This document shows, in pieces, positions 20,000 to 26,097 of a stretch of DNA of 64,000 bases; the first letter of the stretch is position 1; each line of letters begins with the position of its first letter. The stretch is from Styela clava. Taxonomy: Eukaryota. A program made the translations under genes and the position numbers. The DNA lies in the NCBI RefSeq assembly GCF_964204865.1, contig NC_135252.1, positions 10,478,001-10,542,000 on the forward strand, in the 5' to 3' direction. The notes beneath the pieces were generated by a model. It did no database searches. It had not been told where the DNA came from and worked only from the letters and a program-made list of their open reading frames with translations.

Positions 20000-22456
20000 A
20001 AAGTCTGAGTGAAAACAAGTCGAAAGACTAAAACGTCTTAAATTTGAAAACTAATAATTTTCAACAAAGCGAATCAGAAATGAAGACAATGCAGAATCGC
20101 CAAATAACAATCAATTCCCATGCCTTTGTGGTTTGAAAATTGGCCTTGCAATTTTATTGTACGTTGTTACAGTCGGCATGTAATCCAGTTAGGTTAAGGT
20201 GTATAATTTGCTTTTAATACAGACGAAATCACATCCACACCATGCGAACAAATGTATGGCTTTCAGCTTTTCGAGATTTCAGCGGGGTTGAAATATACCG
20301 TCACCTCAATTGACTATTAATTGGTCCAGCCGGAAATTGAAGATTCATACTCGGAGGTTAGCCGTATTGTTTGAAATATGACAAAAAATTACCACATACA
20401 TTACCTTATACAATGCAAATAAAATAAATTTAACGTAGTTGGAATGATTGAGTTGTTCCAACTCTGAATTATTTGAAAAAATTGATAACCATATTAGCAG
20501 CACCGACCATGCTGGAAGGGATTAGTTGATTTGTATCGGCGATATGTCACGGTCCTATCGCTGTTGTGACGCATCTTGCGCGGTCTTCTGATTGATTTTT
20601 GAAGGAGAATATACGCAAACTCAACATTTTTTTAAGCTCAAGCGGATCCAATTTATTATATAAGTGCTTCCAGTGGGGGTAATAACATCAGCCGAGGAGA
20701 AGCCTCCGTACTACGCACTTGGAAAAAAAATTGTAGATATATTATATATACATGTATTGTCTGTATTGCCTGGGTTGCAGTATTGCGATATGTTTTCTAA
20801 TTTTTTAATGGAAAGGGAGTCCTTGAAGGTTTTGTATAGAAAGCTTATGCTCTAATTAAAATTTAAAACAGTAAAAATTCCCGTACAATAAAAAAGTGAG
20901 ATTGTGTTCGCCAAGAGATTAGATTTGTATTTTAGTCACAGTTTTAAAGAATGTACTAAGGAGCGATCTCATAATTAGTGAGTGCCTATTATTTTCATTC
21001 CGCACCTGCATATTCGAATATTACAACTTTTTCCAGTACGGCTGGACTCTTTAATTATTGTTTTATTTTTACATGTAAATACATTTATTCATAAGGGGGT
21101 TTGAAAATAGGAAATTTGATTAGAATGCATTTCATTCATATATGTTATTACACGCATTAAGCAGATTTTACTTTTGGGAATATAATCCTGAAACCGACAT
21201 ATTGAAATCGAACTTTAATGAAATGAGGAAATGTTAATCGCTATTAAATACTGGAGTAGAGAACAAAGCCACGGGCACTGTCATTAAATATATATATATA
21301 TATGGTTGCAATTTCTGGACTTCCATATTGGAATGTTGCTCTTCCAATATAAAGCGACGTTCAAATTCTAGTCAAACTTGAGTTAAAGATATTCGGGAGT
21401 GCGCAAATCAGGTTTTTTAAAAGTGCTTGCTATCGTGCTGAACATTTGCTTTGCTAATACCAGCAGGGTTTTTAAACTTGAAGGTGGAACTGACACCAGT
21501 TTTCACTATAGGCAAGACAGAGTAGTTTTGCATTTTCGGTTACAAATAAATATTTATTTGGCCGTTTTCAATCTTTTTTTCGGTCATCGCGATTTAGTTG
21601 GAAATACTGAATCCTAAAGTTGCTATTGCATGTGCTTCCATACATTTGTCTCTGACAGTGCACAAGACATTAGAATGTCACAAAACATGGTAGTATCGAA
21701 ATCATTCGCCGGATGCAAAAGTACGAGATAAATTGATCCGTTTTTTTAATTAGCAATTCGGACATTTATATAATTATATCTAAAATTAACTTGAACCGAT
21801 CGCATACATTTTCGTAGATATAAATAAATAAGCTTTCGCAGTTCTCATGCTGATGTGCAAGCTTGGTGTATGCAATTTTTATTATTAACTTATGCTTATT
21901 CCAATATGTTATCGGAAATCGTTGATTACAAAAGCAGGGAGTAAAGCACGCATTCATTCTAACACCAGTTTCATAAAATATTTTGTTTGATCGATTCTTA
22001 ACATATCTCGATTGTGTGCTATAATTTTATAACATACGATAATGCAGCCGTAATTTGTAGTTGAGGTGAGTATATTTAGCATAATATAGAGCGCTGTATT
22101 TAAAGTCAATATATATATTCTCTCGCAGCTGCGAATAATGTGCCTTTAGTTGTAGTAAATCTCCCTGTATTTGCGAATTATTCATACACCTGTTAAACAT
22201 TATGTAAATATATTGAGAACAAACCCCGCGCGAACGCATAAGCTGGCACTTAACACAGGTTGTAACATAATTATCCGACAACAGTGATTGGTAGACAATA
22301 TGATGTGGTGGTATATTCGACATTGCTGAAACTGATTTTAGACAAACGTTTTTATTAAAATCTTTCTGGTAAAAACGGTTTGGAGATTTACATTCGTTTT
22401 ACACATACTTGTTATTGTTATTTTCAGATTTTTAATAGATCAGTATTGTACAGTTT

Positions 22457-23529
22457 ATGAGAAACAGAAATATGACAAAAACACTGTTATTGTTTTTGGT
22501 TTTGTTTGGACTGGAATATTTCGTTGATTCGAAAAGTATTGTGAGTGATGATGAAGCAGCTGCAGAGAGCGACATCGAAAAAAGGCAGCATTGGTCATAT
22601 GGGTTTGCGCCAGGCGGTAAAAGAAGCTTTCCCCAAATCGCTGAACGTCAACACTGGTCATATGGATTTGCTCCGGGTGGTAAACGAGAAGAAATACCCA
22701 CAGACGTAGAAAAGAGGCAACATTGGTCGTATGGATTTGCACCAGGAGGAAAAAGAGAATTCAAGGACATGCCTAATATGCCTGAACTTAGTGAATTTGA
22801 AAAAAGACAACACTGGTCTTACGGTTTTGCTCCTGGTGGAAAGAGAGAATTTAACGATCAGAAAAGAACAGCTTGGCCCGTAGATATCCCGTTAAATGCT
22901 GAAGAAAAACGAAGTGTCTGGAATTATGGATGGGCTCCAAACGCAGAAAGAGAAATTGACCCAGGATATTTTATTCGACAATTGCTAATCGCGGTAAGTT
23001 CAGACACAAAAATAATCAGAAAGAAATTTAGAAGTCTATCAGAGATTTTCGATTGGGCTATTTTATCTCTACTCGGGCAAAAACAGATAGCCCTTCACCC
23101 CACCACGGTCATTTTAATCCTTTCCTACGCGTTAATTCTCCGAATCGAAATTTAGTATCAGACACAATCCCATTGTTAACCATATTGTAAAGATAAATTT
23201 GCAAAGTTTCGAAAAATCATTTCTCAACTACTACTGAAATGATGTTTATTACTTCCATTAGAGAGAGTGAGAGATTTTTTACTTCGTCAACCAAAAGAAA
23301 TTAACAGTCATCGTAATAATAAAAATAATAGCAATAAATTAATTTGATATAAACAGGAAGGAGTGATACGACCGGGCGGTCATCAAAGCCAACTCCCTCC
23401 TTTTCAGGTTAAGACTCACAATTTCAGATGACTAAATATAAAGGTAGAACATTCTATAGTTTAAAATTATAATGATCAATTTTTTGTCTGCAGAGGAATG
23501 TCAAAAGTAAAACTTACTCATACTTATAA
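22457..23529 (+). CDS. GNRH: Gonadotropin-releasing hormone polyprotein precursor (tunicate-type, 4 x QHWSYGFAPG-amide)
   Basis: Signal peptide MTKTLLLFLVLFGLEYFVDS (ATG 22457 or 22472); decapeptides at 22586-22615, 22649-22678, 22718-22747 and 22808-22837, each followed by G-K-R (amide donor plus dibasic site) and matching the GnRH signature QHWSxxxxPG. The main coding exon ends at the strong donor GCG|GTAAGT (22993); the last coding exon 23494-23529 (RNVKSKTYSYL*) after TTTTTTGTCTGCAG is inferred and less certain. An acceptor at 22427 implies a non-coding first exon upstream. Confidence 0.96.
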
Positions 23530-24963
23530 TTATATTACAAACAACGCAGAATCGACGGCAAAACACTGACCTTTGCCATTCAATGACATGTGAAGCAATA
23601 GATCATTAGATTTATCGAGAAATTTAAGCGGTTTAAAAATTGTACATTCGGGTGCGAAAAGTTTTACATTGTGACAAGAACATGTTGGCAAGTACAGAAT
23701 TGTACTGGCAAGTACAGAATTGGCATATAACGAATCGTTTGAAATCAAGAACGGTAAATTATTTATTATATTATCAAAATTAAGGAAGATAGTAGTTACA
23801 AAAGTTGCGTCAAACTTCTTTTCACTAAAACTCAGATTACAACAGCATTTGATAAATGGTATGGTAACCAGTAAATTATCCAAAGTTCTGTCATGAACTC
23901 AAATGTAACTTTGGGACTTTGCTTCGCGTTTGTCCTCATTTAGTACGCATGGACGAATTATATGTCATACCGTTAAGTATTAATTGAGATTACGGACCGA
24001 TATGAAAAACTTAAAATATATTCTCAAACAACTCGGTTATTTGACCGGAAAAGAATCCTATACGTTGATATCGCCTAGGGATAGGCGATAGGATAATACA
24101 TTAATAGAATATATGAGATTCGGGGACATTTTGATATTTTTGTATATATTCCCTTGTGTAACAAAGTTAGTTTAACGGGTATAAAAAGTATACTAAGGGC
24201 GAAATATTATATATATATTTCGTGACGACGCGGTATATTAAATACCATGTTACATGAAAATTATAGTCAAGTACCAGACATGATATCGCTCCCATTTCAA
24301 CTTTCCGTTTCGGAGTACTCCGACAATAAATGCTTTGCAAATCACCTCATCCGTATTTACGATTAATCAATACCTGAACTTGATCCCTATGTTCAATGAG
24401 CGTAAGTATTGATTAAAAACTCGGTCATTTATTATTAAAATGAACATTTTGTAAAATGATTTCGGTGATTCAAAAGACGTATTTGTATTAGTTCCACTTA
24501 CATTTTACCAGAGGTTCAATGTAATATAGGTATTTTAATTTGATATCAACTAAACTTTCTTTTGTACAAAAAAACGACATTTTAATGCCATTTTAGTCAT
24601 ATGCAGCTAATTAGATAATGTTGCGATCATCAATTTATATCATTCATTTACATGCGGGTGCACTGTAGTTCATTTAGTATTCATATTGACAATTCTCTAT
24701 AGGCATTCTGGCTTGAATTTAGCAGATGCTAGAAATGTATTGGGCAAACTCAACTACGGCTCGCCGTGGCATTTCGTGCGACCCCGTAAACTTAGAAAAA
24801 GTTGCGACAATTCTTTACAAGAACCAATTTGCGTCAGTTCATGATTTTACTTTGTTATCTAATATATTTCTTGAAAAATTCTTTAATTTGGGATATTTTA
24901 CATGTTATATTTTAACTGAAGGTAACTATATAATATGATCTTTTGAAGAAATAAAGTTTTTTT

Positions 24964-25095
24964 TCAATATTGTTGCTCTTTGCAAAACAAAAAAGATTTT
25001 CTGAATGCGGCCTTTGCAAAATAACTTTCTCAATATTGTTGCCCTTTGCAAAACAAAAAAGATTTTCTGAATGCGGCCTTTGCAAAATAACTTTC
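24964..25095. repeat. Tandem duplication, 66-bp unit, two near-identical copies
   Basis: TCAATATTGTTGC(T/C)CTTTGCAAAACAAAAAAGATTTTCTGAATGCGGCCTTTGCAAAATAACTTTC at 24964 and 25030. Confidence 0.92.
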
Positions 25096-26097
25096 ACCGC
25101 CCCTGGATTAGAATATATAAAATTGTTGGATTTAATAGCCATAGACCACATAATCATCACAAGCAATAATAAAATCTCTAAACTTATTTGAATCTAGAAA
25201 TCCATGATGGAATAAGAAGAACAAGGAAACAAAGAAAAATCGAAGAATAATATAAACGCTGAATTAAACTCGTATAAAAAGTAACCAAGATGAAGTCATT
25301 TATGGCGTAGTTGTGTATAGCCGAGGACATTTGTGATGCGACCTGAACAGCAATATATAACGTCTGATTTTTTGTGTTTAAAATTGTATTATTTTTCAAT
25401 AACCACTCGATTGCAGTTTCTGTTTGTTTTTTATAATGTAAGTTGGGACGCCGAGTTAATGACTTCTCACTGCAACAGCGCCTCGATGTATCATCTTCAG
25501 AAAAATCTCTCCTGTTAGTTAACGGTTGCAATTAAGATTTTAATACTTGTACTCCCATCAGCATGTCAGGCTATCAGACAATAAAAGCGAGTACGACCCC
25601 AAAATGAAAAATGGTGATATGTTCCGTATAAAAGAGCTACATTTCATAAATCATTATTCATGTTGTCCCAACGATGCGAGCATTTTTTTTTATATGTCCT
25701 GAATAATCTGAGTACATAACCTTGCAACCCGTTATACAATAGTGAGGTTGGGATTATAAACTAGGAAGGATAGAAACAGAATGACACATAGAAAAAATTA
25801 TTACCGCAATTGAGAGTTAAAATTTTAACATAGTTCAGTGATAAATCGGCATAAAAGTAGTTTTCGTTTTGAAGTCGATTGAAAGCGTATGAAATCAAAT
25901 ATATACAGCTAATAAACCTAAACTAAAAGTTTTCTCGAGATCAAGCGGTTTGTGAGCAGGTGCAATAACCAGCGTATGGGTAAATAAAAAAAAATGTAGG
26001 TCAGTGCTCTCCACCCAATCTTTTTTCTTGTGTGGCCTATAATCAGTTTGGGTAAAAGCGGTATGGCCCACTACTATCTTGTTAGAATTGGCTACAC

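What the first reader, a model, noticed from the sequence alone, without database searches (positions are those of the whole stretch)
22862..22951. Two cryptic peptides after the four canonical copies: KR-TAWPVDIPLNAEE and KR-SVWNYGWAPNAER
Seen: both follow a KR site, have Trp at position 3 and Asn10 followed by Ala-Glu. SVWNYGWAPN matches the GnRH decapeptide at 5/10 positions (W3, Y5, G6, A8, P9) and has Trp7 as in vertebrate GnRH2/3, but lacks pGlu-His and the amidation Gly. Established: Ciona has a GnRH-related peptide (Ci-GnRH-X) reported to dampen GnRH receptor signalling. Inference: fifth and sixth cassettes diverged into co-released, non-amidated peptides that might modulate GnRH receptors or bind another GPCR. 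This is my best candidate for an undescribed system in the window; the GnRH origin of the TAWP peptide is weak.
Basis: partly seen in the sequence, partly recalled or inferred. Interest (0 to 1): 0.75.

Follow-up and report, generated by a model that had tools for sequence, protein, structure and literature searches.

The report
Decayed GnRH copy and spacer peptide
In a sea squirt's GnRH hormone gene, one of the two "cryptic peptides" is a worn-down fifth copy of the hormone and the other is part of a spacer, and nothing found so far shows that either acts as a signal of its own.

Summary
The sequence is exactly as described. Window 22457..22993 is exon 1 of a transcribed, spliced GnRH precursor, 99% identical to Styela clava LOC120342289. 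It has four identical QHWSYGFAPGGKR cassettes, then KR-TAWPVDIPLNAEE-KR-SVWNYGWAPNAER.

SVWNYGWAPNAER is a real GnRH-derived cassette: 0 of 5000 shuffles reached its score, and a cassette profile gave p 0.004. It has lost Gln1, His2, Ser4, Gly10, the amidation Gly and the Lys of the KR site. It lies where Halocynthia roretzi has its last cassette, tGnRH-11.

TAWPVDIPLNAEE shows no detectable GnRH ancestry (5000 of 5000 shuffles, profile p 1.0). With EFNDQKR before it, it aligns with the single inter-cassette spacer of the H. roretzi precursor. That spacer also has an internal KR followed by xxWP..IP (19 of 5000 shuffles).

Between species the hormone cassettes are 92-100% identical. The two segments are 32-38% identical, like the pro-region and spacers (11-33%). 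A relative with seven canonical cassettes has neither segment. Protein and metagenome searches found no other copy.

Most likely these are by-products of birth-and-death evolution of a cassette array, released as acidic, unmodified spacer peptides. A signalling role is not excluded; only two other species could be compared. None of the seven paper searches (six run for this purpose) found this precursor or these peptides. The scan had already noted the four canonical copies on this window.

The parts
22457..22993 (+). Exon 1 of the GnRH precursor gene (179 codons, from ATG to ...QLLIA); Styela clava LOC120342289 type
   Evidence: ORF; 99% identity to P0001; Pfam GnRH PF00446 with 4 stretches; spliced contig with 0 differences
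22586..22624 (+). Canonical cassette 1, QHWSYGFAPGGKR
   Evidence: differs from the other copies only at synonymous sites
22649..22687 (+). Canonical cassette 2, QHWSYGFAPGGKR, preceded by the single-Arg site IAER
22718..22756 (+). Canonical cassette 3, QHWSYGFAPGGKR
22808..22846 (+). Canonical cassette 4, QHWSYGFAPGGKR
22847..22867 (+). First half of spacer 4, EFNDQ-KR (internal dibasic site)
   Evidence: begins like spacer 3 (GAATTC/T AAG/C GAC/T) and like the H. roretzi spacer (EF...KR)
22868..22912 (+). c5: TAWPVDIPLNAEE-KR. Read here as the second half of spacer 4, not as a GnRH cassette
   Evidence: no GnRH signal; EFNDQKR+c5 aligns with the H. roretzi spacer EFESNMAMTDDTEKR-ENWPYEKFIPAMQEIARELQKR, 11 identities, 19 of 5000 shuffles
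22913..22951 (+). c6: SVWNYGWAPNAER, decayed fifth GnRH cassette, positional counterpart of H. roretzi tGnRH-11
   Evidence: collinear alignment with H. roretzi, 0 of 2000 shuffles
22952..22993 (+). C-terminal tail EIDPGYFIRQLLIA, continued in exon 2
   Evidence: tails of P0002 and P0005 are not significantly alike
22994..25197 (+). Intron (GT..AG, 2204 bases). The 232-aa ORF listed to 23155 is read-through into this intron
   Evidence: joint in X5 and X16 contigs; ORF list
25198..25215 (+). Exon 2 coding part: KSMME and stop
   Evidence: pattern match; agrees with the end of P0001 and with the spliced contig

Best explanation
The gene is a Styela clava GnRH precursor built from five cassette units, not six. 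Units 1-4 each give the predicted decapeptide pQHWSYGFAPG-amide. In unit 5 the cassette has decayed to SVWNYGWAPNAER. It keeps the core W3, Y5, G6, A8, P9 but has lost the Gln that cyclises to pGlu, His2, Ser4, Gly10, the Gly that donates the amide and the Lys of the KR site. TAWPVDIPLNAEE is the second half of the spacer in front of that unit, cut off from the first half (EFNDQ) by an internal KR. The Halocynthia roretzi spacer has a similar layout. When prohormone convertases cut the precursor to free the four hormones, these stretches are expected to come out as short, acidic, unmodified by-products, as the other spacers do. c6 would come out either alone (SVWNYGWAPNAE) or still attached to the tail. 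Shown here: the sequence, transcription and splicing, the GnRH descent of c6, the lack of it for c5, the low conservation between species, and the absence from a relative. Inferred: the cleavage pattern and the lack of a signalling role.
For: Gene and transcript. The four canonical copies differ at 6-10 of 39 bases, all synonymous, so selection keeps the hormone, whereas c6 differs at 17-18 of 39 bases and 7 of 13 residues. c6 is GnRH-derived (0 of 5000; p 0.0037). c5 is not (5000 of 5000; p 1.0). Pfam GnRH matches 4 stretches in P0001 and nothing at E up to 10 in the 49 residues from 22847 to 22993. Spacer reading of c5: against the H. roretzi spacer 19 of 5000, against S. clava spacer 3 215 of 5000; DNA units start alike. 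Conservation between S. clava and H. roretzi: canonical 12 of 13; c5 7 of 22 aligned columns, KR included; c6 against tGnRH-11 5 of 13; pro-region 7 of 22; spacer 4 of 15. P0002 (260 aa, seven canonical cassettes) has nothing like either segment. A search with residues 131-184 of P0001 against 5.8 billion proteins found only P0001 itself (1 candidate). The 62-residue piece from copy 4 to the exon end found no candidate. The metagenome scan, which included the pattern WNYGWAPN, found no relative. Decayed cassettes occur elsewhere: clearly in 2 of 17 precursors (S. clava c6; Clavelina P0010 QIGSYGYRPGSKN) and at the border of significance in 2 more (P0022, P0003; p 0.054 and 0.058). Read directly from the sequence, c5 carries net charge -3 and c6 without its Arg -1, like the other spacers.
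Against: c6 keeps a KR in front and ends in AER, the same three residues that precede canonical copy 2 (IAER|QHW), so it could well be cut out cleanly (layout). Its changes are clustered. Given 17-18 random base changes, keeping 6 or more of 13 residues has P 0.02-0.05, which hints at some constraint on the core. That test was chosen after seeing the data and rests on 13 codons. The internal KR followed by xxWP..IP is shared with a member of another family, Pyuridae (19 of 5000, one of 10 comparisons of that segment; c5 alone 341 of 5000). That could mean an old, retained spacer peptide. The reading frame stays open through both segments to exon 2. Comparative data are thin: two other species, one of them unnamed. 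No peptide data were available.
Confidence: 0.7

Rival explanations
1. One or both segments are co-released bioactive peptides, non-amidated GnRH derivatives that modulate GnRH receptors (as Ci-GnRH-X does in Ciona) or act on another GPCR.
For: Flanking basic sites are kept, KR before both and AER after c6 as before canonical copy 2. The core W-Y-G-W-A-P of c6 is kept, with clustered changes (P 0.02-0.05). The segments are transcribed in frame. A precedent exists for a GnRH-related partial antagonist in an ascidian (passages in PMC7697785).
Against: All ascidian GnRHs and Ci-GnRH-X keep pGlu1-His2-Trp3-Ser4, Pro9-Gly10 and a C-terminal amide (passages). c6 keeps only Trp3 and Pro9, and c5 only Trp3. 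There is no counterpart in P0002 and low identity to H. roretzi. No other protein shares these stretches. From general knowledge, not tested here: free, unblocked, acidic termini usually mean weak receptor binding and short life.
Confidence: 0.1
2. The KR-xxWP..IP.. stretch (c5 and its H. roretzi counterpart ENWPYEKFIP...) is an old spacer peptide kept in Stolidobranchia for a role in the precursor itself (folding, sorting to granules, pacing of cleavage) or as a second secreted product. c6 is merely decaying.
For: The collinear alignment of EFNDQKR+c5 with the H. roretzi spacer has 11 identities, among them the internal KR, WP and IP (19 of 5000 shuffles). The whole region after copy 4 against the H. 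roretzi region after tGnRH-10 gave 0 of 2000, though the cassette and the KR sites drive most of that score.
Against: c5 alone against the H. roretzi peptide gives 341 of 5000. The 19 of 5000 is one of 10 comparisons of that segment. P0002 has no such stretch in any of its six spacers. Identity of 32% is no higher than in the pro-region.
Confidence: 0.15
3. The resemblance of both segments to GnRH is chance.
For: For c5 the tests agree with chance.
Against: For c6: 0 of 5000 shuffles, p 0.0037, in register after a KR, at the position of a cassette in H. roretzi, and 21-22 of 39 bases identical to the canonical copies.
Confidence: 0.03

Closest known systems
Ascidian multi-copy GnRH precursors (Ci-gnrh-1 and -2 of Ciona; H. 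roretzi precursor with tGnRH-10 pQHWSYGFSPGa and tGnRH-11 pQHWSYGFLPGa)
   Same: Several QHWS....PGG(K/R)(K/R) cassettes in one precursor, separated by acidic spacers. The S. clava decapeptide differs from tGnRH-10 and -11 at position 8 only. There is a second GnRH gene in the same genome, as in Ciona.
   Different: Four identical copies plus one decayed copy. The reviews read here (passages) list two peptides for H. roretzi and say nothing of decayed cassettes or of the KR-ENWP stretch. QHWSYGFAPG was found in no paper searched.
Ci-GnRH-X (Ciona, pQHWSNWWIPGAPGYNG-amide, partial antagonist at Ci-GnRHR-1 and -3)
   Same: A GnRH-derived sequence with changes after the core; aromatic residues at positions 6-7 there, W7 here.
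   Different: Ci-GnRH-X keeps pGlu-His-Trp-Ser, Pro9-Gly10 and a C-terminal amide. c6 has Ser-Val-Trp-Asn, Pro9-Asn10, no amide donor and sits inside the GnRH precursor. That Ci-GnRH-X has its own gene: speaks of expression of 'the Ci-GnRH-X gene'; that this gene is separate from Ci-gnrh-1 and -2 is recalled.
Spacer or precursor-related peptides of neuropeptide precursors (for example GnRH-associated peptide, AKH precursor-related peptide; named from memory)
   Same: Acidic stretches between or after the hormone copies, set free by the same cleavages, and poorly conserved compared with the hormone.
   Different: c6 is visibly a former hormone copy, so it documents cassette death within an array. 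Clavelina P0010 shows a parallel case without flanking basic pairs.

Membership tests
GnRH decapeptide (vertebrate/ascidian type, Pfam PF00446) | N-terminal Gln after the cleavage site (gives pGlu1), then His2-Trp3-Ser4 | tested here: not met
   c6 begins S-V-W-N and c5 T-A-W-P; only Trp3 is kept. The feature is as stated in the reviews (passages).
GnRH decapeptide (vertebrate/ascidian type, Pfam PF00446) | Pro9-Gly10 followed by an amide-donor Gly and a basic pair | tested here: not met
   c6 has P9-N10-A11-E12-R13. c5 has P8-L9-N10-A11-E12-E13-KR.
GnRH decapeptide (vertebrate/ascidian type, Pfam PF00446) | Match to the family profile | tested here: not met
   PF00446 matches 4 stretches of P0001, best-scoring at residues 44-53 (first cassette); only that stretch's position was listed. 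It matches nothing in window 22847-22993 at E up to 10.
GnRH decapeptide (vertebrate/ascidian type, Pfam PF00446) | Descent from a GnRH cassette (homology, not function) | tested here: met
   Met for c6 only: 0 of 5000 shuffles, p 0.0037, 21-22 of 39 bases identical. Not met for c5: 5000 of 5000 shuffles and p 1.0.
Ci-GnRH-X-type GnRH-related antagonist | pQHWS start, Pro9-Gly10, extended C-terminus ending in Gly-amide | tested here: not met
   Features from the passages; none but Trp3 and Pro9 is present in c6.
Ci-GnRH-X-type GnRH-related antagonist | Partial inhibition of GnRH receptor signalling | not testable with these tools
   Needs receptor assays.
Precursor spacer / by-product peptide | Lies between or after hormone copies and is bounded by the same kind of basic sites | tested here: met
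   Layout.
Precursor spacer / by-product peptide | Much less conserved between species than the hormone | tested here: met
   32-38% against 92-100%. Absent in P0002. Only two other species were available.
Precursor spacer / by-product peptide | No biological activity of its own | not testable with these tools
   Needs peptidomics and assays.

The most novel reading that the evidence does not exclude
The last unit of the stolidobranch GnRH precursor carries a second, non-GnRH product. This would be an old KR-xxWP..IP.. peptide shared by Styela and Halocynthia. In S. clava the neighbouring cassette would have been reshaped, not just lost, into SVWNYGWAPNAE, with its beta-turn core kept and both receptor-activating ends removed. 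Both would be released with the hormone in a fixed ratio (4:1:1) and would tune GnRH receptors or act on another receptor.
Probability: 0.08. Interest if true: 0.6.

Novelty: new member of a known kind. Interest (0 to 1): 0.27.

Why it matters
As read here, this is a clear snapshot of how tandem neuropeptide arrays turn over. Four copies are held identical by selection while their synonymous sites drift. One copy is dying, and a spacer has an internal cleavage site. That helps in annotating tunicate GnRH genes: the S. clava gene is still called 'uncharacterized' in the source record. It also warns against counting every KR-flanked stretch as a peptide. If the minority reading were true, it would give a second natural example, after Ci-GnRH-X, of a GnRH-derived modulator, this time made from the same precursor as the agonist.

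Tried and rejected
Other species.
- The whole-precursor word search gave 13 proteins, and the full HMMER scan of 1.84 billion representatives gave 17. Only P0002 and H. roretzi P0005 are close enough to compare spacers.
- The search with the tail region found only the query's own protein. The short-fragment search found nothing.
- Both metagenome scans found nothing: where 39 pattern matches yielded no confirmed relative, with 0 matches.

Runs of relatives.
- Organism B (X14) covers 22893-23065 with 6 differences, of which only the three in the intron were listed. Whether the coding part of c6 differs there is unknown.
- X15 and X16 are essentially identical to the window.

Other tests.
- Tails of the three precursors are not significantly alike (1464, 915 and 3521 of 5000). 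The idea of a shared GAP-like helix, which I had from reading the sequences, is not supported.
- c5 as a tandem duplicate of c6: the in-register test was weakly positive and the gapped test negative. Half of the shared residues fit the cleavage-site context. I rejected this in favour of the spacer reading.
- An open reading frame as a sign of constraint was rejected, because the frame also stays open for 54 codons into the intron by chance.

Papers.
- No paper held QHWSYGFAPG, QHWSYGFAP, SVWNYGWAPN, TAWPVDIPLN or ENWPYEKFIP.
- Searches for Styela with GnRH, neuropeptide or peptidomics terms gave nothing on this precursor. In PMC12922724 (passages read) Styela clava appears only as the source of a promoter.
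- Hasunuma and Terakado 2013 is not held, so what its authors said about the H. roretzi spacer was not seen.
- Supplements were closed and not asked for. Supplementary tables of S. clava genome or neuropeptide papers might list this precursor.

Structure prediction and the protein atlas were not used, since they would not bear on short unstructured peptides.

Full report
What is there. The window between 22457 and 22993 (+) holds an open frame that encodes the following, in order:
- a signal-like start and a short pro-region;
- four identical cassettes QHWSYGFAPGGKR, at 22586-22624, 22649-22687, 22718-22756 and 22808-22846;
- EFNDQ-KR at 22847-22867;
- TAWPVDIPLNAEE-KR at 22868-22912, here called c5;
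- SVWNYGWAPNAER at 22913-22951, here called c6;
- EIDPGYFIRQLLIA at 22952-22993.

The finding's coordinates and every residue-level statement in it are correct.

The gene. Exon 1 is 99% identical to a 184-residue protein that its source names 'uncharacterized protein LOC120342289' of Styela clava (P0001). P0001 ends ...QLLIA-KSMME. The five extra codons and the stop lie at 25198-25215, behind an AG. Contigs of public runs confirm the splice. In X5, one 686-base contig lies on 22429-22992 and 25197-25318 with no differences, skipping 2204 bases with GT..AG ends. A 154-base contig of X16 shows the same joint. The 232-residue ORF that runs on to 23155 is therefore read-through into the intron. 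The window's protein differs from P0001 at two residues (R2K, and K to R in the basic pair of cassette 2), neither in c5 or c6. Pfam's GnRH model matches four stretches, best-scoring at residues 44-53 (the first cassette), and nothing in the 49 residues after cassette 4. A second GnRH gene lies about 457 kb upstream on the same contig. Whole-protein steps used the database protein P0001.

Is c6 GnRH-derived? Yes.
- Local alignment with the canonical cassette gives WNYGWAPNAER over WSYGFAPGGKR, and no shuffle of 5000 reaches that score.
- I built a position profile from 51 canonical cassettes (34 distinct) of 17 tunicate precursors. In it c6 ranks second among all non-canonical 13-mers, per-protein p 0.0037. 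Only the Clavelina stretch QIGSYGYRPGSKN ranks higher.
- At the DNA level c6 shares 21-22 of 39 bases with the canonical copies.
- c6 has lost everything the reviews give as the ascidian GnRH consensus, pGlu1-His2-Trp3-Ser4 and Pro9-Gly10-amide, except Trp3 and Pro9 (passages read in PMC7697785, and PMC5592718).

Is c5 GnRH-derived? There is no sign of it.
- Against the canonical cassette, every one of 5000 shuffles does as well, and its profile score is far below the shuffled median (p 1.0).
Gapped alignment gives nothing (1856 of 5000).
- The shared A-E belongs to a context that recurs before the cleavage sites of this precursor: DIEKR, IAER, DVEKR, EFEKR, AEEKR, NAER (layout).

What c5 is instead. 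Taken together with EFNDQKR, the 22 residues between cassette 4 and c6 behave like a spacer.
- They start like S. clava spacer 3: EFKD... against EFND..., 9 identities, 215 of 5000 shuffles with the final KR held fixed. The DNA shows the same start.
- They align best with the single spacer of the Halocynthia roretzi precursor P0005: EF--------NDQKRTAWPVD--IPLNAE-----EKR over EFESNMAMTDDTEKRENWPYEKFIPAMQEIARELQKR. That is 11 identities and 19 of 5000 shuffles. It was one of 10 comparisons of this segment, so it is roughly 0.04 after correction.
- Both spacers have an internal KR followed by xxWP and then IP.
- In the same collinear alignment, c6 falls on tGnRH-11, the last H. roretzi cassette (0 of 2000; the cassette and the KR sites drive most of that score).

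So the array has five units, the fifth with a decayed cassette, and c5 is half a spacer.

Conservation.
- Between S. clava and H. roretzi the hormone cassette is 12 of 13 identical. Against P0002 it is 13 of 13.
- c5 against its H. roretzi counterpart has 7 identities in 22 aligned columns (32%, KR included).
- c6 against tGnRH-11 has 5 of 13 (38%).
- The pro-region has 7 of 22 (32%) and the spacer 4 of 15 (27%). Against the six P0002 spacers the range is 11-33%.
- P0002, a 260-residue precursor from an unnamed source, has seven canonical QHWSYGFAPGGKR cassettes and no stretch like c5 or c6.
- Searching residues 131-184 of P0001 in 5.8 billion proteins returned only P0001 itself. A 62-residue query for short fragments found no candidate. 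The metagenome scans found nothing.

The caveat is that only two other species could be compared.

Points in favour of some constraint.
- The four canonical copies differ from each other at 6-10 of 39 bases, all synonymous. The array is therefore not young, yet c6 still keeps six residues.
- If 17-18 base changes are thrown at random on a canonical copy (stop codons excluded), six or more residues survive in only 2-5% of trials. The changes are piled up in codons 1, 2, 4, 7 and 10-12.
- This could reflect selection on the core, or a late loss followed by fast change at the ends. With 13 codons and a test chosen after seeing the data, it is a hint only.
- c6 is preceded by KR and ends in AER, the same three residues that must be cut in front of canonical copy 2. 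Release as SVWNYGWAPNAE is therefore plausible. Otherwise it stays attached to the tail as a 32-residue C-terminal peptide.

How it most likely works. Convertases cut at the KR and single-R sites, and carboxypeptidase trims the basic residues. Four copies of the decapeptide are then cyclised and amidated (inferred from the family). What is left over is SFPQIAE, EEIPTDVE, EFKDMPNMPELSEFE, EFNDQ, TAWPVDIPLNAEE and SVWNYGWAPNAE with or without the tail. All of these are acidic and unmodified. Chance is excluded for c6.

Compared with what is known. Multi-copy GnRH precursors are the rule in ascidians. The predicted S. clava peptide differs from tGnRH-10 and -11 only at position 8. Ci-GnRH-X is the known GnRH-related partial antagonist, but it keeps both consensus ends and the amide, so c6 is not of that type. 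Decayed cassettes are seen clearly in 2 of 17 precursors examined and at the border of significance in 2 more. I found no paper that names these segments, this decapeptide or a Styela GnRH precursor. The original H. roretzi paper was not available and supplements were closed.

Verdict. c6 is a real, decayed fifth GnRH cassette. c5 is better read as part of a spacer. This is a new example of a known kind of thing, of modest interest, with a small chance of a co-released modulator that peptidomics and receptor assays could settle.

Noticed in passing
G000:C3:10043475-10043753 (L002 1204..1686), about 457 kb upstream of the window's gene: A second GnRH precursor gene (matches S. clava LOC120342299, P0009) with QHWTTGIGPGGKR, QHWTSGLAPGGR and QHWTTGLSPGGKR. 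These have Thr4 instead of Ser4, and the middle copy is followed by GR-A rather than a basic pair.
   Followed up: partly
window 23260-23440 and 24829-24907 (inside the intron): Stretches on which many unrelated contigs of X5 and X14 lie at 80-90% likeness, with loose ends on both sides and high summed depth. This looks like an interspersed repeat in the intron.
   Followed up: no
window 22637-22828 and 22883-22992 plus 25197-25240: Runs labelled as other organisms (X15 organism C, X16 organism D) hold this gene with 0-1 differences, X16 in spliced form. Either they are the same species under another label or material was carried over.
   Followed up: no
window 22893-23065: Organism B (X14) has an 11-base insertion behind 23005 and base differences in the intron. 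Intron stretches differ by about 5%, the 5' coding part by 2 of 151. This is a close relative or a divergent haplotype.
   Followed up: no
P0010 (Clavelina lepadiformis precursor) residues 82-94: QIGSYGYRPGSKN is a clearly decayed GnRH cassette (profile p below 0.0003) with no basic pair on either side. It is a parallel case of cassette death in another ascidian order.
   Followed up: partly
window 22457-22474: There are two in-frame ATGs (codons 1 and 6). The transcript contig starts at 22429, so either could be the start. The window has Arg2 where P0001 has Lys2.
   Followed up: no
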